Shown one piece after another: positions 9,301-50,600 of a DNA stretch of 64,000 nucleotides. Below the pieces are notes generated by a model that saw only the letters and a list, made by a program, of their open reading frames with translations, did not search any database and had not been told where the DNA came from. The position numbers and the translations under genes were made by a program. How positions within the stretch are numbered: the first letter of the stretch is position 1; every line of letters begins with the position of its first letter. Source of the stretch: Thalia democratica (lineage: Eukaryota); contig OZ241830.1 in the NCBI GenBank assembly GCA_965202585.1, forward strand, positions 15,810,001 to 15,874,000, given 5' to 3'.

Positions 9301-12300
9301 AAATGTTTTACTAAAGGTATAAACAATTTTGAACGTTGTAACTTCATTAACCATCCTATAAAGATAAAACAAAATCTTGTAGATAGTTTCAAATTTTTTA
9401 AAAATTTAAATCAAAATATAGTTTTTTAAATTTGAAGGGGAACGTCACAAATAAAAATAAAAGAAATAGTTACTAACCGTGAGTTTCAAATCCGTTGATC
9501 CAGCACTTGTCTCCCACATTAGGTCTTTCCCCGGAAGGAAGACACGCCGGGTAGGCCCATTCCGTCATTTTAACATCCTGGCTCAGGTGGAGCAGGGCCA
9601 AGTCGTTGTTGGGGTGATCGTAATCAGGGTGAATTATCACCTAATAGCAAAAGTTATTTTTTCTAAGTTTGTATAAAAACAAACAAAAACATTAGGTCTT
9701 AAAAGTAAATTGAGTTTACTGTAATCACAAAACTACAATGTGGATTATCATTATACTTTTAAAATCCACCGCTTTCAAAATCAACCCAATTTTTTTATAC
9801 TTTATTTATTTAATATTTTATTCAATTTATATATTTTTGCATTTAAATTTTTTTTAAATTTATTTTTACTACCACTGTTACCTCTAACGCTAACCCTAGA
9901 TCGGTAAGCGGTTCTCGAATTTGACTGGGTAAATTTTGACTGGGCGGACTTGAACGCGGGTGGATTTTGAACATGTCCCGGATTATCACTTTTGTGATGA
10001 TGTACAATTTTATGGAAATGAAAAAGTATAAAGTATAAATAGTTGTTTAGGTCCTAGTTGTAGCATAATTAAAGCAGTAAAATTAAAATTTAAGTAGAAT
10101 ATAAGATGATAAACACCTAAAACAAAAAAAAAATAAAAGTAAAAACAAACAAATAACGAAAAGTATTATTGTTGTTTAGTACAAAAAAGTGTATAATAAT
10201 TTTAAATGTTTTTAAATTCTTTAATTAGTTGCACCACAAATAAAAATCTGAAATATAGATTTAACTTGTCAAAAGCGCAGTAATTTTTTGTCTTTTATAA
10301 TTAATAAACTAAAACTAGGTTTTATAGTACACGAAAATAAACGTAACACAAAATTTAGCTTATATATTTAGCATTAATATTATATATTTAAGTTAGTACA
10401 AATAAATGTTGTAGATAAAATTTTTCTGTGTTTTTATTCGTAAATAAAATTAAAACATGTAATTTATAACGATAATCTAAATTTCAAACCAAACACACTA
10501 CAAACTCAAATGAGAAAAGTAAAAAAAAGAATATTACTTACCGAGTTATTACTTAAGTTATATTATAACAAACAAGCAAAAAATAATAGTTTATAAAATC
10601 ACCAAGTTAAAAATGTTTCTCGTATGGTTAAAATACGTTTATTTTACTTCTTAAAACTACCAAAGTATATTATTTACGTAAATAGTTATCATATATATAG
10701 CCATATTTTGTTGTAATTTACAGAAAACTTTAAAAATTATGATACTTTTATTAGATAGACAAAAGTTTTTACTCAGTTATCTGTAAGTATTTTAATAATC
10801 TGAAAAAATAAAAATTATTTGAGCTATTTAGAATATCGATTATTTTAAAGAAAACTAAATCAATAAGAAATATTTTAATAATTACAGACGTCGTATCTTA
10901 TTTTTGTTATTTGCGTATAATTAGTTTTAAAAGTTTAAAAAGTATTAATAACGCGCCTTTAATTAAACAAAGAAAAAAAAAACTTTTTAATAGTAACCTG
11001 AATTTAATAACCAAAACAACTTCATCAATTATGGTATAGACTGCTTGAGAGTTTTTAATGACAATAGTAGTGGTAAAAGGTAATCAAAAGCAATAGTTAC
11101 TGCAATCTAAAGTAATTTTCGATTAGTAATAAGAATCAATCATTTGTTGGGTATTTTAATGATTGCTGTTAAATTATAGTTTATATATAAAAGAACCACT
11201 CAAATATCTACAGTTGTTTTAACAACTTCTGTTAAGTAAATCACATTAGATTAAAGCAGTATTTATTAGATTTTATTAAATCTAGTTTATGCTAATTTGG
11301 GTATAGATTTTATTTATAATTTCTATGATGTACTAATGCAGGTGTTTTAATTAATAAGTTTAACAAAGAAGTTATATAAACAAGTTAAATTAGCTTTCTG
11401 AAGCATTATTTAAGAAGCATCTCTTATAGTTTTAAACTACAAAAAAAAACATTTTTTACTCTTTTTATAATTTAGACATTTTAAAAATGTTTTTAAAGAG
11501 CATAAGTTTACGTATTTATTCTTTTTTTTATACAACAATTTTTTAACAAAGGATCACATGTGCAAAACAATATCGTTTAAATTGTTCACAAGAATAATTA
11601 AAAGTATTGTCAATAATTAACACTTTCATTTCTTAAGTTTTATCTCCAATATTTTAAATTAATTTTTTAAAACAAGTGTGCTAAGTTTTATATGGGGAAA
11701 ATACTTAAATTAAAAGTATTTTAAATCTGTTTAGTCTAATATCTACTTTCTTTTTGAAAATCCTAATAATTAATCTATACTAATTGTAAAGTCACATTCT
11801 ACTCCAATAATCTTATAAAAAGATACAATATTTTTTTTTAATCTTACAGCATCTAATACACTTAACTTCCAACAAACAAAAAAGATATGGCAGCCAACAG
11901 AAACCCCTTACCATTACCTGAAAACGACTTGGTTGAAGCGTACATTTTTTACAGGCGTGTTATCGGTATCTTAAGAAGTAAGAATAAGTTGTGACTTTTT
12001 AAATTTAATCACTTAACTTAAAATTTTAAGTGATAAACTACTACGATAAATATATTAAATAATTGCTACATCAAAGTTGAAGCAGCAAAGTTTCAATACA
12101 ATATTTTCCTTTATTATTTAGCTGGTCTATTACTTAAAAAAGTTAGCAGATAGCGCTTTCATAACGTATACATCTTTCTTAAACACTTCTACTAAAAGCT
12201 TCAAAATTTAAGTTTGAATATGATTTTTATTGTTTAGCTAACCTGGCAGTCATAAAATAAATACAAGTTAAATATATATTTACTAATGTACCTTACTTTT

Positions 12301-15300
12301 ACTTGAACTAAGAAGACAACAATTTCTTTATTTAATCTTCCCAGTCCGTAACTCCTACCTACTTAACATAATTAATAAAGCTCTTGTGTACGTATATAAC
12401 TTTACTGTTTCTTCCACCAGACAGACATTTCTACCTTGCGCTCAACGGAAGCAGGCGAGACGAGGAAGACTACCTGGCGCGGGTGGAGACCGATGGTGAG
12501 GGCAGGATCCTCGGCAGGATCAGAGGAAGAAACTGGGGCAAGATGGACAGGCGGGAGTACGCGGATAGAGGCTGGAAGAACGAAGACTTCGAGAGGGACG
12601 ACGGGATCAAGGTGGGTGTGGATTATATAAACAAGGACGGGTTGGTCACGTTGAGGTACCAGCTTCCGTCCGGTGAACGTCGCAGGAGGACTTTTCGGCC
12701 GCACCTGGGATAATTTGATGTTGTGAAATTTTTGATTCTCGTGTGATTTTTTTATGTGTTCTCGTACTAGTAATAAACCAAGTTTCCCTAATCTGTGTGA
12801 TCCGTGTATGAATAGAATTGTATTAGTAACGCAAATAAAACTGAAAATATAAAGTTTGCAAAAAAAAAAAAGAGAAAAAATCCTTTTTGGCTCCGTATTG
12901 ATTTCTCAATTTATATATTTTAAAAGCATGTTTCAGTGAAATTATTTGAAGTCTTCGAAGTTATAAAAACTTAGTCAAGGTAAAAAATACAATTCGATTC
13001 CTTCGTAAATTCCAAAAGTATTTTATGAAAGAGAGTTTTATTAAAATTAAACAATTATTTAACATGTATTAAATAAATGACATATTCTTCTTTTTCTGTT
13101 TTGAAAACTTGGTTTGTGGTGACAGAGTCGCAATGTTTTGTAATTGTAAGTTTTGTAACAATTAAAAATAAAAACTGCTGCCCTTTTTTATGGGTTTCGT
13201 TATAAATGTGGTGGTAATCTTTTTAATTTAAACTATGAAAATTGATAATTTTAATTTGAAATTAAGTTTTATTAAATGTTTTGTTAGTTCGGTCATAAAT
13301 ATCTATAAACTATGTCAAAGTAAATCATATATTTAAATAAACTAAAGTAATATTCTTGTTGCTTTTAGCACAAACCAAACTGTAAATTAACCTGAAAAGC
13401 TCATACTCAGCAGAAATTTTACTGTACTTATAACTTAACCAACAAAACAAATCGTTTATTTTAAGTACCTCTAACTTCAATGTAGTATACATTATTGCTG
13501 TTATTAAGTTTGGTATTTGCAGAGTAAGTTGTGTCGCTTGTAGAACCAATAAAACAATGCAATTTCAACTAGGCTTGGGTAATAAACATATAAATAGGTA
13601 AACTAAAGTTTTCCGTTATAAAACTTTATTTCAAAATACTACAATAAATTTAGTTTATATTAAACAAAGAACATAACTTGTTAAAAACTGAGTTTTTCGT
13701 TAAGTAAAAAATAAAAAATAAACTTCTCAAATAGTAAAGAAATTGAAAGAAAACACTAGGTTTTTTTATGCTTATATTTATACAATATATATAACTTCTA
13801 TTTGATTAGTTAGTAACTGACTTAAATTTGAAGATTTTACATATATACAAACTTTTTTTCAACAAACTGTTACCATACCTCGTAAACTTGCAGATCTTGG
13901 AATCCTCCTGACACGTAATCCCTCACGTAACCCCCATAACCCCTGTTACCGAACTGAACGTGAACACTGTTAAAGTCATCAACATCTATGCAGTGAGCTG
14001 CAGTAAGGACCCAGTCTGATGATATGAGGACACCGACGCATGGCTGATCGTCCACGTACACTAGCGCCTTTAATGTTTTTTTTTTTTATTTAGACAACTT
14101 TATCAACTGCATATCTTTAAAATTGAAGTTTTAAATTTAACTAGAATTTTAAGATTGGAACTTATGTTTGTATTTAAAATTTAAGTTAAATAAACTTTAT
14201 AGGATAACATTCAATGTTTAAAACGTACATGCAGAAAACTTAACAAACAAAAACACTTGAATCAAACTCACAGTCCATGGAAAGTCTAGTAAATTTGGAT
14301 CTTGTCCTTCCAATAAATCATCGTGCCTCCTCCCATTGTGTCTGTTCTGGCCACATTTGTCTGAAAATATTGTCCCTATTATCAGTTTATCAATGTTACA
14401 TTAAACTGTAAAAAATAGGTATTTAATGAGTTTTTGTTTACAAAAAAAAAGTTATTAAGTTAAGATAAAATTCGATAAAAATATATCGGTTCAAGCCATA
14501 TTTGTCTAAAAGTATTAATAGTTTCATGAATAACCTATCAGCGTTAAGTTGAACTGACTTACATAGGAAGCATTATTAGTTTCTTATCAAAATATTGTTA
14601 AGTTAACTTTTTATTTAATGCTTGTACGAAAAAGTTTAATTGCGATAAAGTCATAAAAGTTAATTAAACAAAAAAGAAGTGTTTAAAATTTTCCTAAAGT
14701 TTAAGTACAAGAGCCTCACTTTTCGATATTTTGCAGCATTTATCTTGTTCCATGTACGAAATGAGAGGTTGATAGCACTGGTGCTTGGTTGAACACTCGT
14801 AACCTCTCAAGTGGTTGTTGCAATACAATCCCTCGTCACAAGGGTTCGTCAGGCACTCGTCAATATCTGTTTAAGTTTTTAGTATTTAAACTTCATTACA
14901 AATCAAGAGTGATTCTGGTACTATTAATTTTATGCATCAAAAATAGTATACAAAATCTGGTTTGTTAAGCTCAAGTTTAGAGCCCAGTACAACAGGTTAC
15001 AAATGACTCGTGATTTCTGTATAGTTTGTATTTTGTTTCAACTAAAACAAATTAAAAGAGTGATTTTGGTACAGGTTATTTTTTATGCATGAATTTAAAA
15101 ATTGTCTTTAAAATATGGTTTGTTTAGCAAAAGCTTTAAATGAAAATTTAAAAAATGAATACATGATCTTCTTTATAAATTTTTTCTAAACGTTATAAAT
15201 ATTTAAATGAAAATAGTTCCTTTTTGTTAAAAGCTTATTTATTAAAGCATGTACTTTTGCAAGTATTATTTTATTTACCTTCACACTTTCCGTCAATCAT

Positions 15301-25261: not shown

Positions 25262-26969
25262 ATGATTTTTATTGGTTTAATATTTACCGTCCTGTCCATC
25301 GCGGATTCCAAAACATGCAAGGAAAGTGACTTTGAAAGGTATACTAAGGAACAATTCGAAATTTCTTCTGACAGTTTTGTTATTCCTTGGTGCAACGAAA
25401 CAAATAAAAGCAACCCTTTTTGTGCGTGCCAAGACCATTACTACGGAGCATACTATCAGAAAAATATTTACAATCTACACAAGTTGAAACTAATACACCA
25501 CTGTCCCAGTTTACTACCACTCAAAGAAATTGCTTTGTATATACAATTTAGATCTGATTTCACTACAAACACTGAAAACAATGGTAAAAGTTTAGATAGC
25601 TTCTGTAAAAAGTTTCAGAGTGAATTCTTAGATAGTTTTATATTTAGTGGTTGGAAGCCAAGTCTCTCGAAAGCATTTTGTGACTTGTACTACTACTATG
25701 AACACAAAAAACAGCATGTATATCTCATAAAATACTATGAGAACTCGATGTTTAGTTCAAACAACGTGGTGATTAAAATCAAAAATTACCTTAAACCATA
25801 TTCCTGGTTTTTAACAACATCGTAAGTTGATAAATATGCTGTAAATTCAAAACAATGTACATTTTTTAATTTTAAATACATAAAAGTTAGTAGTTCACCA
25901 AGTTTAGTCATAAATTATCTAGTAATAATATTAAAGTACTTTTATTTTCAGGCAAAAAGCAACAGTCATAATAGTGTTGACTACTATAGTTGTGATTGGA
26001 GTAGTATCGGTAATTGGAAACACCTTACTACTGGTTGTCGTGAAAAGATCGAAGAAATTACGTCATAGTCAGTACATTTACAAATGTTCAATAGCAGTAT
26101 CTGATATTATATGGGGAACTGTTTTATGTGTTTATTTATTTGATACCACTTTTCATGAATTTGGTCTAGAGTATACATATGAATCTGTAAACTATAAAAT
26201 TCCTTCAACTATTAAAGGTAATAACAATAAAATTATTTTTACATTTGAAATTGATTACTTTTCTCTTGCTTCTAATTATAAAAACTCTTACAATAGTTTT
26301 ATATTATCTAAACTCATCTGTTTTATTCCAGTAACTCTTTTTGTTTCATTAACAACTTTAGTGCTTGCTGCAAGCGATAGATATTTCGCAATAGCATTTC
26401 CTTTTAAGTACAGAAGAACAAATACTGTAAAGTTGGCAAAAATAATAACTGCAATCGTATGGGTATTAAGTACTCTTGGCGTTTTATATACTGAAGATAG
26501 AGCTGAATTTACTAATGACCGTAGAATGGCTTTACTACAAGCAAAAACTTGGGTTTACCAACCCCGTAACGATAGCATTAACCATAAAGTCATAGCTGTA
26601 ACTTTGTTTGTGTTGTTTGGTTTACTTTGGATCTTAACTTTGCTTACTTTGCTCAGCATTTATAGAAACTTTAAAAAATCACAAAAGTTAAATAAAAAAG
26701 CTATGAATGCGGCTGCCCATGAAAAACAAATGGCAATAGTTTTAGTGGGTATGGTAGTGGTGTTTACTTTTAGCATGTCACCTACAATTTATCACCATGT
26801 GAACGTTTTTGTGCACAATAATATTTTAGGATGTTTTTACTTTTTTTCAACCAAAGACTTTTTCATCTCAAAATGTTTTTTGTACACAAATTCAGCATGG
26901 AGTTTTTTAATTTACAACTTGTTGAACAAAAAGTTTAGATTGGAATTACGTAAACTGTTTAAAAAATAG
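25262..26969 (+). CDS. Class A (rhodopsin-like) orphan GPCR, about 525 aa, with signal peptide and about 190-aa Cys-containing ectodomain; two exons
   Basis: Exon 1 is 25262-25821 (donor TC|gtaagt) and exon 2 is 25952-26969 (acceptor tttattttcag); phase 2 joins the two ORF-track ORFs. Seven hydrophobic segments with TM1 IGN, TM2 IAVSD, TM3 SDRYFAI, TM4 W, TM6 SMSP and TM7 NSAWSFLIY, then an NKKFR helix-8-like segment. Confidence 0.88.
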
Positions 26970-42850: not shown

Positions 42851-45688
42851 CGCTATCAAGTTAGCGAGAGAGTTCAAGGAAAGAGAGACACAATTTAAAA
42901 TATGAGAAAAAATGAGTCTTAGTTGTTGAGAAGGAATTTTATTATAAATTTTCAAATCATATACGAGTCGCTGCAATAAAGCTTACAAAAAATAAGAAAT
43001 TTAAATAAAATTACGGGTTTAAAATACAACTTGTAATATTTTTGTTTAAAGTCTTTAAGAAAACTTGTATTTTGGTTTATACCTTAATTTTTCAAATATT
43101 TCTTTTGAATGTCAGTTAAGAAAGCAAAATTCAACTAAAATTAACTACAAATAGTTACATGCGAAACTGCCCTTTAGTTAAGAAGAAACTTTTTATCGAA
43201 ATTTTATCAGAAAATAGCTACTTATAATAAATTGTTAAGCCTTAAGAACTTAAAAAAATGATTTTATTAAATTATTGTTACGAATAACAACTGAAGATAA
43301 ATTAATCGGGTTAAAAGTTTTCAAAAACACTAGGACTTATTTTTTTGCTCTTCATCTGCAACCCCAGAATATCTAAAATAAGTTTCAAGTTAAAAAAATA
43401 TGAGGGAGTTCATGCTCAAATAATGATAATTTTAGTAAATCGTACATGAGTAATGTCTTACATAAAACAGTTTAGATAACAAAAAAACGTGGACTATTTA
43501 AGCAGTCGTAATTAAAATTATTAAAATAAGTTAACACTTTTTTTTTTTGAATCAATGACCATTAGAAAATTGAAGGTTCTTGAAATTTATGATCGGGCAT
43601 AACTGTATATTTTATTCAAATATTAGAAATATGGAAAAAACAAAAATAACAACGTTTGAAAACACATCAGAATAAAAACAGTCAAATAAATAATTAGAAA
43701 ATAAAATTTTTATTTTCTTAAACATCCATTTAAGATTAAAGTTCCAAAAGTAAAAACAATTTTTCTGAAAGGTCCCACTCAAAAATTTAAACCCCAATTT
43801 AATGTATGTTTTTAAATTAATGGCAAAGGAGCATTCTCTAGAACTAAAAAAGATATTAGTTAGCTTTATAATAAGGAAAATAGTTGGATCTAAAACTTTG
43901 ACTTTAAAAAAAATTGCAACAAATGCTAATCGAGATAAGTTAACGCTCATTTCAAGTATTTTCTTGTCTGCTATTAGTGTTGTTTAACTTGTTTTACTAA
44001 TTAGGTTTAAGTTTAGTTTTTAAGTAAAAAAATGATCTCATTTTCTATGTTTATTCTTTACGCTTTAGGGTTAGACTTTATTTTCATTATATCTTACTAG
44101 ACAAGTTTTAGAGTACATTATGAATAAAACTTTATTCAGTTAACAAATAACTTAGTTAATTTTATTTTCTGTTCTTTCTTTTTATTAATTGTTTTATTTT
44201 TAAAGGTTTAAAAGTTCAGACTAAAAAATTTTTTTTTAGCTTTTTAGAAATTATTAAGCATGTGGTGTATGCCTCGATAACCGATTGGATTTTTAGTACA
44301 CCAGTTCCTTAGACCAAAAATGTTGAGCGATTGTTTTTATCGTTTATTCTATTTTATTTTATCTATTTATTTAAAACATTCTAAAGTAAAGTTTTTGTAT
44401 TGTTATTGTTGTTTGCATGGTGCTTCAACACAATATGTTCATTCATGTCATGTCTTGTTTTATATAGAGTAGCTCTAAGTATTATTCGATATCGGCATTT
44501 AGTATAAGTAAAGTATAAATTCTATCATGGATTTTAGTTTGGATGTACACTTCACTATACCCTTATATATTTGTTTATCTTAACCATTAAGTTATGCTCA
44601 GTAGTGTAAATTAAAGTTTTAAAATTTGATAAAAATGAAACCTATTAGAAATGTTACTTCTTATTTTCATCCACAGAGCAACTAATTAGATACGTTTAAT
44701 AAAATTCTTAGTTAAAATTCTAAAATATTTTTTTTTTAATATCTTAGTTTTTTGAAGGTTTTTGCCATTTTATAGGTTTTAATTGTTTTTCTTCTAGTAT
44801 ACTATATTTAATTAAAAAACTTTCTTTAAAATAACTTTAATAATTTTAATAAGTTTTTTTTAGCCAAAATTGTCACACTAATGCTGGACACTTTCAAAAA
44901 AAGTTTTATCAACTTTTTACTTAAAAAAGTTTTTTGATTTATAACTCATGCTGTTGCAATTTCCTGGTTTCAAATTTTTTTTTAACTTCAGAATACTTTG
45001 ATACTAAAGTAGTAATAACTAGATTAGTTATATGTAAAGTTTGAAATATTTAATGAACACTTTTAGCAAATTAAAGTTTTAAATATATAGTTTTTAAAAA
45101 TCAAGTACATTAAAAATTGCATAAACTCGATTCCTAAAGATATTAATATTTTTATAAACCTGATAAATAACAACAAATACCCTTTAATATATAAACTTTG
45201 CTTTATACAGTGTACTATTTAGCTATTAAATACTGTTTTTACTAAAAATATTTTTTTATATCTACAAATATAAAACTATAAGATTAAGAAAATATATGAC
45301 AGGTTTTTAAACTTTTTACATGATATTTATTTTGTAACGTTTTTGTAAATTTATGTTTTTTTCAAAAACTAACTGACTCTATTTAAAAATAAATATAAAC
45401 TATAGTTTTTTTTCAATTATGTAAGTTATCTTAACTTCTATAAATACTGCCACCTATTTGTTTATATTTTTTGTAAGAAAGTCAATCTTATTTAGTTTGT
45501 TGCAAATATTAAACAGATATCCAATACACTGTGATAGATACTGAACCTAGTAACATTATAATAAATTTTTTAGTTGTTTTGTACTTAATAAAACATTTTC
45601 TTATAGTTTATACTACACTGTCATTTTTTTCAAAGTAAGTAAAGAATCTTTTTATTTTAGAATTATCTTCTATCTATTTTATTTATAG

Positions 45689-45830
45689 CAGGGTTTCTCA
45701 AAGTAGGCCCCTTTAGGATCATAACCAGCAAAGGGACCACAGGGTGGCCATGAGGTCATAAATTAAATTTTACACTACATGTTCTGGAGTTGACGAGGAA
45801 AAGCAAAAAAAAAAAGGTCTCAGACATTTT
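45689..45830 (+). mobile_element. Truncated left end of a hAT-Charlie-like element
   Basis: It begins CAGGGTTTCTCAAAGT, a typical Charlie-type terminus. No matching right end was found. Confidence 0.4.
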
Positions 45831-45940
45831 TAATGGTAGCTTTGAAACTTATGCTAGACACTATGGAAATATTAAAACAAATTATGGGGTAATAAGATAT
45901 TAAAGACAAAATTAGGTGAAAAATATTCAAATCACAAAAA

Positions 45941-46190
45941 GTAGGCGCTGGGCAGCTAGCCGAAATGGTTTCAGCTGCCGGTCCTACGTATCAAGCTCAC
46001 GTCCTGATGGAATAGTCATTTCAGTCTGAAAATACGACCAATCTTCACAACCTAATACACATCGGGCTAACAGAAGTGCTGGCCACTGATCGTATTCTTA
46101 TATTCTTGCGTAGTCGTCCCCATGGTAAGCGACCACCGGGACTCGAACTCGGGACGCAGGACCAGCAGTTGGAAAGCAAAACCGCCTGTT
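45941..46190 (-). mobile_element. tRNA-derived SINE remnant; partial second copy at about 46362-46420
   Basis: The minus strand has a B box / T-arm CCCGAGTTCGAGTCCCGG (B box 46140-46148) after a degenerate TTTCCAA loop, then a GC-richer body ending GCGCCTAC-TTTTT. The end aaaagtaggcg...gctgccggtcct recurs at about 46362. Confidence 0.55.
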
Positions 46191-47394
46191 TAATCTAATT
46201 ACGGTATATATAAAATTTTAATAAATTATTAAAAAATAAGAGTTGAGACAGTTTTTTTGTTAAACCAATTTCATTCTTTATAAAATTTTAATTTAATTTT
46301 TTGAATACACTTATTATTTTTAAAATATCTAAGACAGAATTAGATAAAACTGACTTAAATTTAAAAAAAAGTAGGCGTTTTGGCTTGGGCTGCCGGTCCT
46401 GCGTACCAGACAGATACCCTTGCAGGCTAGGTAGATTAAATATATTAACAAACTGGTTAACAGAAAGATCTATTTTTATTTGTACATCTTCTTTTAAAGT
46501 TGTAAAAATTGTACTAACTGCTTTTTTTGAGAGAGGAAATTAGTTATATCTTGTAATTGCAATTATATCAACTATTTTTTGGTCTTTCATACCTATACAG
46601 TTTTTTTGTTTGTTACTATGTAATCAAACGTTTTAAACTGATGTTTAAGAAAAAGTATTATTTTTTTATTTTCATTAAATCATTTCTTTATTACTTAGGT
46701 TTATTTAAACGACATTTCAAATTAACTGCAAAGTTTTATTTCTTAGAGTAAATTATGAATAACTGTTTATTGTTTCTAAAATAAATTTTATAATTTTGTT
46801 GATTGGTGACCTACTATTGTTTTAATGTAAAGCTTTACGGTTAAAAATTTAATTCATACTTTCCACAACCAAATATTCAAAAAAAAAACTAAGTTAAAGT
46901 TTACTCAATAAAAGTTTTTGACTAGTTCATTATTAAAAACTTTTTTATAAATATTCTAGAAATATGATTTAGCTATGTTTTGTTTATGCTATAACGAACA
47001 TAGAGAAAATTTTCATAGAATTAGAAAATAAATATTATTATCGATATAAAAAAACATTAAAACAAAACAAACCTAGTTTAAAAAGCTTATTTTAAGTCAA
47101 TAGTTCATATAGTAGTATTTTGTTATGTTTGCAGGTGTAAAATGTGCAACTATATTATAATTAACTTTAATTTAAATATATACTAAACAATTTCTTAACT
47201 AATTATTTAAAAAATTCAAAATTAATAAACTACATAATCGATAATACTTAAAACAACTACTGGTAATCTTATAAACTCAAAACTTATGTTTAAACATTCT
47301 TGCAACGATTCAGTCACTGATTAAAACTTTTAACAAAAACGCTTCTCGACGACCAGAACTTGCATTTTTTATCAATTCCAAAATTTTCTCATTA

Positions 47395-47640
47395 ACACGC
47401 AAGAAAGCTTGCCGCGAAAAAACACTGATTTTTGCAAAATGTTGCTGCAATGCGAATGCAGCAGATGAAACTTGTTTCAGCACGGCGGCAACTGAAAACA
47501 CATTTCGACTCGTGAGGCGCCATCACGACGCCCTGGCAACCCGGTGGAGCCCCGTGACGTTGCCATGGATACCAATTAGCAACCGCGGGTGGCAACGGGT
47601 ACTTGTATTTGGCGCCAATAATATCGCAGACGTATATTAC
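47395..47640. promoter_or_regulatory. Mirror conserved non-coding element (arm B)
   Basis: GTTGCCATGGATAC at 47559-47572; GGCGCC at 47516 and 47611. Confidence 0.6.
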
Positions 47641-50600
47641 CTCATAAGCAGTCGCCCTGTATACTATGGCAAGAAATTAAAGTTTTACGGGTTAAATAAA
47701 TAAGTTTTCTATAAAAAGTTCAAGGAGATCAGAGGGTAAACACGACAAAAAATTTATTGAATCTTAATGTGTTGTAATAAAAGTTAAAAGACTAATAGTA
47801 TTATTTTTTTAGCTAGTTAGTTTTATATATATTTTTTTGTAATAGTTAACTAATACACACAGTTGAAAACGTTAACTTGAAAGTACACAATTGATTAAGT
47901 TTGTTTGATATTAATAAGTTATTAACTTTACTAATTTAATAGTATTAAGAAGTTAAGGCGAAAGTTGAACTTTTATATATCTTAATTAGCAAAACTAACA
48001 ACAACATACAGTTTTCTAAGTCAAAAATGGTCTTTGTTTGCAATTTAAAGCCATAATCATAGTTTTATAATTACACGTAATTCAAAGCGTGTTCTTCTAA
48101 ACGTCACTAACAACAAATCATCGTTGATCGTAGATCAAGTTAAAAGATAACAAGCAGATAAGAAGCTTCACGAAAATATAATCCCCGGCTTAGAAGGAGC
48201 GCGCGTATGCTGACAACAAACTTCTAAACAAAACTTTCATTTTTGGCGCCAAACCAATCATGGTTGCCATGACAACTTTGACGCGAAGCGGTTTTGTTAG
48301 CACTGATTGGGCTTAACAAGACAAAACAAATATGATGCAAAGGAAAATAATCGGATTGTCAAAACTGTGTTTGCGCAAACTCAGTTATTTGACTGGAACG
48401 TCTTACTGTGGCTTGATTGCCTTTAGAACCTTCTAATGAGTTTGAATAAAGTTAAAAACTTCTTATATGTTTCGTTTAATTTAAAACGTTCTATTCAATT
48501 AAAAAAAACTTGTTTAAATCGTAAGCTTTTTGACCTGCTTAATTCTACAAATATTATTCAAAACTTCTTTTTTAAGTGTTTGAAGAGAATATTACGAATA
48601 TTGTTTTCATAAGTTTGCTAAAACTAAAATTTGCTTTTTAAAACAACTAGATACTTATAAGCAAGCCGTAAAAACAAGGTCAAAAACAAGTTCTAGTTAT
48701 TAATTTTTCTGACAGTTATACCAGAAAATTTCATTTATAAAGGCTGTTTTAACCATTGAAAGTTTTTAATAAACATAAAAAGATTTAAAAATAGTTGGGT
48801 AAAAATACAGTACTCAGCTTTTATAATGTTTTAGAGCATTTTTAAACTAAATACTTACGATTTATTCTACTTTAAATTTCAGTAGAACAGAGTAAACATA
48901 AACTATTGATTCTTATTTAAGTTTATTTATGATCTTTTAAAGTAAAGTAAAACTTAAAATAAACTTAAAACAAAAGTTTGATAAACATTCACTAATTTTA
49001 CTTACTTATAGAACCTAACGTTTTGTTTTCATTAATGTAAATATTTAATAATTTACATTTATAAAAAAAAACATTATTGGTATCTAAACTCAATTTTTTG
49101 CTTCTAAAAGATTTAAATTACACCAATTTGTTTTAAATATTTCTTCAAACAACTAACCTACCTTCTTATAAGTATTAAAGAGTTTAGCGTGTTCCTCAAA
49201 ATATCAAATGAATATTTAACACTTTTAAATTCTCATAGGCGCCATATTTTGAAGCTTATTAATAATCAGCTTATCAAAATGAAATTAACCAATTACAACT
49301 CGCCACCAATCAAAAAATACGGCGCCAAATAATAATTATGTGAATCTTCTAATTTGATTATTGCCGGCGTCGCAAATCCGCTTTTGTTACGTCATTATCA
49401 GCAGATTTTCACGTCACACCGGTGCCAGATGGAATTTCGTTTGCCAAAAAATATAGAGATGTTCAAATCTATTATGAAGCCCTGACTTCGATTATATATT
49501 GTAAATGTCTTTATAACTTTTTGTTTTTTTATGAGAATATTAAAGCTTAAATTGTTTCATAATTATAAATTAATATAAGAATAAATATATAATATATACC
49601 TAGTTATATATAATAATTTTTAAATATCCAGCTAGAAATAATTATGTCATAAAGAGTTAAGTATAAAAGTCTGTAACTATTTTTAAATAGAAATTAAAAG
49701 ATTGTTGTATATAACTAAATTTATACCATAATCTTATCAGTTTTATGGAAGGTTATTCCGATGATGCGCTAAACAAAACTAATTAATATACTTTTTCTAA
49801 ATGAGTGACTTATAATTAAACTTTTTAGTTTTAAAATTATTAACAAAACCAAACTACTCAATAACATATATACTATTTTTAAATAAGTATGTAAAGTAAT
49901 TTTTATTTATGGTTATTTTTTTCTAAAAGCAACACTTATGTGTTTAATGCGAAATAGTGTGTTAGCTTTTAATAATTTAACAATAAGTATAAAATTTTCG
50001 AAGAAAATAAAACTATTTTCACATATATGTGTAAACTGTGGTCAATTTACATATTTTAAACAAAAACTTTGCCGATATCAGGTTATAAACTAACAGCCAT
50101 AGTACCAAATATGTTTCAGATAAGATTAATTCTGCAGTTTTTTCAAAATTTCGGCATCAAAAGCAGTTTTTTGTCTCGACGTTTAAAACAAGTTCAAAAG
50201 CACTTTTAATCTATTAAGAAGTATAAAGAAGCTCAAACTAATAGTCATCGAAGTTTGATAAAGTTATATCAGAAAAAAAAACTTTCACCTTTTCTAAGCT
50301 TATCGCCATTACGTCACACTGAAGAATGACGTCACAATAAAGTTTGCATGTTGCCAGCTGATGTACGTAGTTTTGGGTGCATTATTTAAATTTAAGGACA
50401 AATTAAACTAGTTGATGGGTATGATTTACATGTTTCTCTGTATGTTATTTATGTTACAGTTTTCATGAATGTATCGATTATAATAACCTTATAAGAATTT
50501 AATAAAACAAACACATAGGTTCTGAAATAGTAACTAATTTCTAGAAAAATAGATGAGTTGAGTTTTATATATAATCTAATAAAAATATAGGTTTAGAAAA

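What the first reader, a model, noticed from the sequence alone, without database searches (positions are those of the whole stretch)
11850..12870. Orphan 127-aa gene nested antisense between the catalytic-His and catalytic-Asp exons
Seen: a phase-matched two-exon ORF, MAANRNPLPLPENDLVEAYIFYRRVIGILRNRHFYLALNGSRRDEEDYLARVETDGEGRILGRIRGRNWGKMDRREYADRGWKNEDFERDDGIKVGVDYINKDGLVTLRYQLPSGERRRRTFRPHLG. It has strong splice signals, an upstream acceptor, polyA signals and the most GC-rich codons in the window. It has no Cys and no signal peptide, is highly charged, and shows alternating hydrophobic strand patterns. I do not recognise the family. Inference: a lineage-specific small beta-rich protein; a horizontal or transposon origin is possible but not shown, since host exons are also GC-rich.
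Basis: partly seen in the sequence, partly recalled or inferred. Interest (0 to 1): 0.75.

Follow-up and report, generated by a model that had tools for sequence, protein, structure and literature searches.

The report
Small tunicate-family gene nested in intron
The two-exon 127-codon reading frame is real and belongs to a small, previously undescribed protein family found only in this pelagic tunicate and its plankton relatives, so it is not a lone orphan, a transposon or a bacterial import; whether this copy is expressed could not be tested.

Summary
The gene has ATG at 11887, a GT donor at 11978, an AG acceptor at 12419-20 and a stop at 12711-13. It encodes 127 aa without Cys, has two AATAAA signals downstream, and exon 2 is the GC-richest stretch of the window. 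It lies antisense in the intron between the Trypsin-His and Trypsin-Asp exons of a minus-strand gene.

It is not an orphan. The genome holds 8 intact and 2-3 decayed paralogs. All the others lie on contig C7, apart from a near-identical copy on the small contig C452. About 20 more relatives occur on unnamed marine (mostly Tara Oceans) metagenome contigs.

The exon-1 motif, the start position and a phase-1 intron one codon before R-x-F-Y are shared across subfamilies. Pairwise dN/dS is 0.12-0.49. No named protein, Pfam family, solved structure, virus or prokaryote matches among 1.8-5.8 billion proteins. AlphaFold models (pLDDT about 68) give helix, hairpin, helix and a three-strand sheet, with no fold match above noise.

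Cautions: only DNA runs exist, so the splice junction is unconfirmed. The window copy's own branch has dN/dS about 0.75, and it lacks two near-invariant residues.

Verdict: probably a functional, diverged, tail-less family member that reached this intron by DNA duplication. Its biochemical function is unknown. Interest is modest.

The parts
11814..11821 (+). TATAAAAA string 28 nt upstream of position 11850; possible core promoter element
   Evidence: Read. Such strings are common in 74% A+T DNA, so this is weak.
11830..11849 (+). Pyrimidine run ending in AG; candidate spliced-leader trans-splice acceptor (or the 3' end of a 5'UTR intron)
   Evidence: The genome carries 1299 copies of the ascidian-type SL 16-mer against 9 for the reversed control. 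The intronless paralog L006 has a similar AG about 25 nt before its ATG. Use of the site is inferred.
11850..11886 (+). Putative 5' UTR (37 nt)
   Evidence: Read; inferred.
11887..11977 (+). Coding exon 1 (30 codons plus 1 nt). It encodes the N-terminal helix and carries the family motif D-L-V-E-A-Y-I.
   Evidence: One search finds the motif upstream of exon 2 in paralogs L008, L011/L012, L013 and L014, and fused in frame in L006/L009. The paralog model places a helix at residues 3-23.
11978..12420 (+). Phase-1 GT-AG intron, 443 nt, GC 0.26
   Evidence: The same acceptor position and phase occur in L007, L008, L010, L011 and the metagenome contig L031. Phase-1 donors were read in L008 and L011.
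12421..12713 (+). Coding exon 2 (97 codons including the split one, plus TAA). It holds the family core R-H-F-Y-L-A-L-N-G-S, E-T-D, N-W-G and F-x-R-D-D-G.
   Evidence: HMM E = 1.9e-37. dN/dS values come.
12714..12860 (+). Putative 3' UTR with AATAAA at 12772-12777 and 12834-12839
   Evidence: The region 12714-12814 and a further block at 12825-12973 align at 68-71% with the probable ortholog contig L015.
13870..14061 (-). Host gene exon with the trypsin catalytic-His region (ORF bounds, not exact exon ends)
   Evidence: Pfam Trypsin, profile positions 26-55, E = 4e-7; the L-T-A-A-H-C motif is seen.
9473..9640 (-). Host gene exon with the trypsin catalytic-Asp region (ORF bounds)
   Evidence: Pfam Trypsin, profile positions 75-129, E = 8e-10; the N-D-L-A-L-L motif is seen.

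Best explanation
This is a genuine protein-coding gene. It has its own transcription unit on the plus strand inside a 4.2-kb intron of a minus-strand trypsin-like/TSP1 gene. It belongs to a multigene family so far seen only in this tunicate genome and on marine plankton metagenome contigs. The family domain is about 125 aa. It consists of an N-terminal helix (exon 1), a beta hairpin carrying W-V-E-T-D-x-E-G-R-I-L, a loop with N-W-G, a helix, and a three-stranded sheet. Some subfamilies add a long acidic, Trp-containing tail. The window copy belongs to a short, tail-less, GC3-rich subfamily. Because it keeps the family intron, it reached contig C6 by DNA-level duplication and not by retroposition. 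All other copies, including a decayed sibling, lie on contig C7, apart from a near-identical copy on the small contig C452. Shown: gene anatomy, family membership, the conserved intron, protein-level constraint in the family, and the absence of any known relative. Inferred: transcription from the intron, possibly with spliced-leader trans-splicing at the AG ending at 11849, and a 15-kDa basic, intracellular product. My guess for its action, at low confidence (about 0.2), is that the domain binds a charged partner such as nucleic acid or an acidic protein. On that guess, the tail-less window copy acts as a free domain.
For: The ORF and its signals are confirmed.

Family membership: 10 places in the window's own genome match by protein search and 11 match rows by HMM, of which 8 are intact. 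HMM searches found 13 and 14 further proteins among 1.84 and 5.8 billion.

Shared gene structure: the exon-1 motif and the start position are shared. The phase-1 intron sits at the identical position in three subfamilies and in another species' contig.

Constraint: pairwise dN/dS is 0.12-0.49 wherever dS can be measured. The haplotype differences inside this CDS are 4 synonymous to 1 non-synonymous. A rough binomial against about 72% expected non-synonymous gives p of about 0.02; this is my own arithmetic.

Internal control: the decayed sibling L013 has stops in both exons, has lost the acceptor AG and the N-W-G motif, and has GC 0.44. The window copy keeps its ATG, GT, AG, reading frame and poly(A) signals.

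Orthology: the 3' flank is conserved with contig L015. The tree places the window copy as sister to 7 metagenome sequences with support 97/94.
Against: There is no expression evidence. Only two DNA-type runs from one sample hold the stretch. Their contigs cover the intron evenly and none joins 11977 to 12421.

The branch to the window copy (including the sister clade's stem) has dN/dS of about 0.75, against 0.12 inside the sister clade.

The window copy has R where at least 90% of members have W (domain position 20). It ends one residue short of the near-invariant P of the K-P-W motif.

At GC 0.58, open frames are easy to obtain by chance: the antisense frame is also open for 100 codons.

Haplotype differences are about as dense in exon 2 as in the intron.

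The structure models have only medium confidence (pLDDT 68-69), and nothing supports the proposed binding function directly.
Confidence: 0.7

Rival explanations
1. It is an intact-looking relic: a duplicated family member that landed in the intron, is no longer expressed or constrained, and has not yet acquired a disabling mutation.
For: The branch dN/dS is about 0.75. The near-invariant W20 and terminal P are lost. GC-rich sequence keeps several frames open, including a 100-aa antisense ORF. No RNA evidence exists. Exon and intron haplotype diversity are similar.
Against: The start codon, both splice sites, the reading frame across 384 nt and two poly(A) signals all survive, despite dS of about 0.6-0.7 to the nearest relatives. 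CDS differences are 4 synonymous to 1 non-synonymous. GC3 of 0.74 is kept in a 26% GC genome. The truly decayed sibling L013 has dropped to GC 0.44 and carries stops in both exons.
Confidence: 0.2
2. It is a fragment of a transposable element, or a gene acquired horizontally from a bacterium or virus; its GC-rich composition would betray a foreign origin.
For: Exon 2 is the GC-richest stretch of the window. The family is multi-copy.
Against: Only 3 other genomic places match at the DNA level. They match at 73-75%, and only within the coding part. No TIR or LTR frames the gene. The copies are old (40-55% aa identity, dS saturated). No prokaryotic, phage or viral relative was found. A conserved spliceosomal intron is present. 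Host exons also reach GC 0.48-0.58, and paralogs range from GC 0.37 to 0.50, so the GC richness is local and not foreign.
Confidence: 0.03
3. The GC-rich block is a minus-strand exon of the host protease-like gene, and the plus-strand ORF is its mirror image.
For: A 100-aa ORF is open on the minus strand at 12402-12704.
Against: The His and Asp exons already abut in the Trypsin profile, with no missing segment. The minus-strand product has no Pfam hit. In the A+T-richer paralogs L006, L009 and L011, only the sense frame gives an ORF of 90 aa or more. Substitution patterns fit the plus frame.
Confidence: 0.02

Closest known systems
Taxonomically restricted (lineage-specific) gene families of animals
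   Same: There is no detectable homolog outside a narrow lineage. The proteins are small, evolve fast and lack any known domain. The copies include tandem clusters and pseudogenes.
   Different: It is not a single de novo orphan. It is an established family with several subfamilies, a conserved intron and clear purifying selection in most members.
Nested opposite-strand genes inside introns (general knowledge: e.g. OMG/EVI2A/EVI2B in a human NF1 intron, and the cuticle gene in Drosophila Gart)
   Same: A complete small gene with its own start, splice sites and poly(A) signals lies antisense inside a host intron.
   Different: Expression of neither partner could be examined. There is no sign of any functional link to the host gene. 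The other family members were not checked for nesting.
PUR/Whirly-like strand-strand-helix nucleic-acid binders (PDB 3k44 Pur-alpha)
   Same: There is a weak structural resemblance of the C-terminal sheet. Pur-alpha and Pur-beta appear in two hit lists. Like them, the protein is basic.
   Different: Z is only 3.7 over 41 residues, below the noise level the tool quotes (Z 7-8). There is no sequence signal. This is a lead only, not membership.

Membership tests
Unnamed tunicate family defined here (alignments A1/A2) | Profile match to the core domain (R-x-F-Y-L-A-L ... E-T-D-x-E-G-R-I-L ... N-W-G ... F-x-R-D-D-G) | tested here: met
   The HMM of A2 hits window 12423-12707 at E = 1.9e-37. All 15 invariant columns of A1 are present in the window copy, although the window sequence is itself part of that alignment.
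Unnamed tunicate family defined here (alignments A1/A2) | N-terminal motif D-[LYF]-[VI]-[ED]-A-Y-I encoded 5' of the core, with the start codon just upstream | tested here: met
   Found in the window and in L006, L009, L008, L011/L012, L013 and L014. ATG-initiated in the window, L006, L009 and L008.
Unnamed tunicate family defined here (alignments A1/A2) | Phase-1 intron one codon before the R of R-x-F-Y (absent in the intronless 66.47-Mb subfamily) | tested here: met
   The same acceptor position occurs in the window, L007, L008, L010, L011 and L031. Phase-1 donors were read in the window, L008 and L011.
Unnamed tunicate family defined here (alignments A1/A2) | Near-invariant W after Y-L-[VA], and P of the terminal K-P-W motif | tested here: not met
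   The window has R at domain position 20 and ends H-L-G before the P. The sister clade keeps the W and a P.
Pfam DUF6797 (lead from the protein atlas) | Match to PF20601 | tested here: not met
   hmmscan up to E = 10 gave no PF20601 hit for the window protein or any of 23 members. The atlas lead was not reproduced with paralog L006, which pointed to galectins instead.
Galectin (lead from the protein atlas for paralog L006) | Match to PF00337 or a galectin-like beta sandwich | tested here: not met
   No Pfam hit. No galectin appears among the fold-search rows shown.
Transposable element fragment | Many copies with similarity extending into the flanks; terminal repeats or TE protein domains | tested here: not met
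Horizontally acquired prokaryotic or viral gene | Closest relatives in bacteria, archaea or viruses; no spliceosomal intron | tested here: not met
   Searches found none. A conserved intron is present.
Trypsin (host gene, context only) | His and Asp regions on the exons that flank the nested gene | tested here: met

The most novel reading that the evidence does not exclude
The family is a new protein fold or domain invented in pelagic tunicates. On this reading the window copy is not decaying but neo-functionalised: its high dN/dS reflects adaptive change after relocation into the intron, loss of the acidic tail leaves a free, arginine-rich binding domain, and GC3 of 0.74 reflects high expression.
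Probability: 0.15. Interest if true: 0.5.

Novelty: new member of a known kind. Interest (0 to 1): 0.3.

Why it matters
The result adds an undescribed, lineage-restricted protein family to the tunicate gene catalogue. The family has about 8 intact genes here, several subfamilies, and no Pfam, PDB or named relative. It also corrects the 'orphan' label. The family gives a compact case for studying how young animal gene families diversify: tail-bearing and tail-less forms, intron-bearing and intronless forms, a relocated copy nested in another gene, and decayed siblings as internal controls. It does not open a long-standing question, and without expression or biochemical data its functional importance is unknown.

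Tried and rejected
RNA evidence: the single run search returned only two DNA-type runs from one sample. Laying them showed even genomic coverage and only spurious short-sided joints, with none at 11977/12421. The splice junction and the comparison with the host gene therefore remain untested.

Protein-atlas leads: DUF6797 came up for the window and galectin for paralog L006. They disagree with each other, have low recognition scores and have no HMM support, so I dropped them.

Fold searches on two models (AFDB clusters, ESM atlas, PDB Foldseek, exhaustive PDB, Swiss-Prot models): the best results were Z 4.1 and TM 0.5 or below over partial stretches. That is below the tools' own noise levels. 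At pLDDT 68 this does not prove a new fold.

A profile search against PDB sequences found nothing at E up to 10. PHROGs gave nothing consistent.

The viral contig scan found no relative.

Hit P0012 (365 aa, six weak repeats) is a repeat protein that matches only a short G-T-I-L...D-G-K-N-W-like stretch. I judged it spurious.

GC-biased substitution on the window branch: 23 weak-to-strong against 16 strong-to-weak changes, which is not significant.

A papers search gave context on salp genomes only (742-901 Mb, over 80% repeats; PMC10686999) and nothing on this family.

I did not model the spliced 127-aa protein itself, because a spliced sequence has no reference in the tools. I modelled exon 2 and the intronless paralog instead.
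Full report
**Observation**

- The ATG lies at 11887-11889 and exon 1 runs to 11977.
- The donor is GAA|GTAAGA.
- The intron is 443 nt with 26% GC.
- The acceptor is a pyrimidine tract followed by CAG, ending at 12420.
- Exon 2 runs from 12421 to the TAA at 12711-12713.
- The intron is phase 1, and the joined product is the 127-aa sequence quoted in the finding.

A pyrimidine run ending in AG at 11848-11849 lies 37 nt before the ATG. AATAAA occurs at 12772 and 12834.

Exon 2 has GC 0.57 and GC3 0.74. The stretch 12417-12709 is the GC-richest 293-nt segment of the whole 64-kb window, at 0.584 against a mean of 0.262. The protein has no Cys, is 37% charged, has 22 Arg and has pI 9.7.

The nesting is real. 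The minus-strand ORF pieces 13870-14061 and 9473-9640 match Pfam Trypsin at profile positions 26-55 and 75-129. The gene therefore lies antisense in the intron between the catalytic-His and catalytic-Asp exons. The antisense ORF over exon 2 (12402-12704, 100 aa) has no Pfam match, and the host does not need it.

**Organism context**

- The genome is 802 Mb.
- The ascidian-type spliced-leader 16-mer, recalled from my own knowledge of Ciona, occurs 1299 times against 9 for its reversed control.
- Relatives of the gene sit on Tara Oceans and other metagenome contigs; the Tara records are labelled marine.

Together these point to a pelagic tunicate that uses SL trans-splicing. That makes the upstream AG a plausible trans-splice acceptor, but this is inference. 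Published salp genomes are of similar size (PMC10686999). I did not establish the species.

**It is not an orphan**

A six-frame protein search of the window's own genome found 10 places. A family HMM returned 11 match rows, two of them on the same decayed locus.
- The window copy is on contig C6.
- Three tandem copies lie at C7 51.82-51.85 Mb. They have 250-300-aa frames that continue into a long acidic tail.
- Two intronless 130-132-aa copies lie head to head at C7 66.47 Mb.
- One copy lies at C7 51.48 Mb, with a near-identical copy on C452.
- Decayed copies lie at C7 51.35 Mb and C7 47.37 Mb.

An exhaustive HMM search of 1.84 billion representative proteins found only 13 hits. A profile search of 5.8 billion found 14. 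All are unnamed ENA metagenome genes on short A+T-rich contigs. One hit, P0012, is a spurious repeat protein. No UniRef or NCBI-named protein appeared.

**Shared gene structure**

The exon-1 motif (D-L-V-E-A-Y-I in the window) is found upstream of the core in L008, L011/L012, L013 and L014. It is fused in frame in the intronless copies, 6-8 residues before R-H-F-Y, just as the predicted splice produces in the window.

The acceptor lies exactly two nucleotides before the Arg codon of R-x-F-Y in the window, L007, L008, L010 and L011. The same is true of the metagenome contig L031. Phase-1 GTAAG/GTAAA donors were read in the window, L008 and L011.

This independent agreement is the best available support for the 11977/12421 junction in the absence of RNA.

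**Selection**

Pairwise dN/dS is 0.12-0.49 wherever dS is not saturated, so the family is protein-coding in this frame. In the A+T-richer paralogs only the sense frame gives an ORF of 90 aa or more.

The tree places the window copy as sister to seven metagenome sequences, with support 97/94. Together they form a short, tail-less subfamily. Its GC3 is also high where measured (0.68 in P0001). Contig L015, which encodes P0001, aligns with the window through exon 2, about 100 nt of 3' UTR, and a further block to 12973 at 68-71%. It is therefore probably the ortholog in a related species.

The window copy is the odd one out in several ways.
- Its terminal branch is long, at 0.37.
- The path to it has dN/dS of about 0.75, against 0.12 within the sister clade.
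- It has R in place of a W kept by at least 90% of members.
- It stops just before the near-invariant P.

Several points argue against decay.
- The start codon, both splice sites, the frame and the poly(A) signals are intact.
- The five haplotype differences inside the CDS are 4 synonymous to 1 conservative replacement, Q to E.
- L013, a decayed relative on C7 that shares the window's P-L-P exon-1 start and L-R-F/Y...P-S-G strand, shows what decay looks like. It has stops in both exons, has lost the acceptor AG and the N-W-G motif, and has GC 0.44.

**What the protein is**

No Pfam family matches the window protein or any of 23 members up to E = 10. There is no PDB sequence relative and no PHROG or viral-contig relative.

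AlphaFold models were made of exon 2 (pLDDT 68.8) and of the full-length intronless paralog (pLDDT 68.0). They agree on the elements:
- an N-terminal helix encoded by exon 1;
- a beta hairpin;
- a loop;
- a helix;
- a three-stranded meander.

Five structure searches gave nothing above the tools' stated noise. The best was Z 4.1 over 43 residues, and all hits covered only the C-terminal meander. The two protein-atlas leads, DUF6797 and galectin, contradict each other and fail the HMM test.

The family is therefore undescribed. Whether the fold is new cannot be decided at this model quality.

**Origin**

A transposon is excluded. Only three other places match at the DNA level, at 73-75%, and only inside the coding part of exon 2. 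No terminal repeats frame the gene.

Horizontal transfer has no support. There are no prokaryotic or viral relatives, and the intron is conserved.

Because the window copy keeps the family intron, it arose by DNA-level duplication. Every other copy, including the decayed sibling, lies on C7, apart from the near-identical copy on the small contig C452. The simplest history is therefore relocation from C7 into this C6 intron. This is inference.

High GC is not foreign. Host exons reach 0.48-0.58 and paralogs span 0.37-0.50. A test for GC-biased substitution on the window branch was not significant, at 23 against 16.

**Mechanism**

Shown: the gene anatomy, family membership and family-level constraint.

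Inferred: the gene is transcribed on its own from within the host intron. It may be SL trans-spliced at the AG ending at 11849. It yields a 15-kDa, basic, Cys-free intracellular protein without a signal peptide.

The conserved charged positions are E-T-D, three Arg residues, N-W-G and R-D-D-G. The long paralogs add acidic Trp-bearing tails. Both features suggest a binding module for a charged partner. I commit to that reading at low confidence only. Nothing links the gene functionally to its host.

**Expression**

No RNA run is served for this organism. The two runs that hold the stretch are DNA-type contigs from one sample. They cover the intron evenly and show no 11977/12421 joint.

**Verdict**

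'Orphan' and the transposon or horizontal-transfer hints are rejected. The gene is a probable functional, diverged member of a new tunicate-restricted family (0.7). The main rival is an intact relic (0.2). This is an ordinary kind of finding with a modestly interesting family behind it.

Noticed in passing
Pfam gave no hit for this piece at E up to 0.01.
   Followed up: partly
window 9714-10027: The summed contig word depth jumps from a background of roughly 30-350 to about 1,600 (9714-9870) and then about 45,000-49,000 (9871-10027) in both DNA runs. A very high-copy repeat sits in the same host intron.
   Followed up: no
G000 C7:47371831-47372073 (L013) and C7:51346284-51346634 (L029): Both are decayed family copies with stops and frameshifts. 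L013 shares exon-1 and C-terminal features with the window copy and may be its nearest sibling within this genome.
   Followed up: partly
L011 1195-1275 (G000 C7:51.478 Mb): This paralog has CTG where its decayed neighbour L014 has the ATG start. It either uses an upstream exon or a non-ATG start, or it has lost its start codon.
   Followed up: no
L008 1800-2361, L010 1800-2394, L007 940-1450 (-): The long paralogs carry acidic tails with repeated Trp/Phe-acidic motifs (of the D-D-W-F-E-D-D-I-F and E-S-W-Y-D-E type). Metagenome relatives P0005 and P0015 have them too. They look like short linear interaction motifs.
   Followed up: no
G000 C1, e.g. 58668396-58668430, 67172907-67172936, 58893195-58893236: The spliced-leader 16-mer occurs about 1300 times in the genome. 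It often appears as head-to-head pairs a few bases apart, consistent with earlier notes on SL-carrying retro-elements.
   Followed up: no
window 25974-26969 (+): An intronless 331-aa ORF with several hydrophobic segments, possibly a membrane receptor. An adjacent 187-aa Cys-containing ORF lies at 25262-25825.
   Followed up: no
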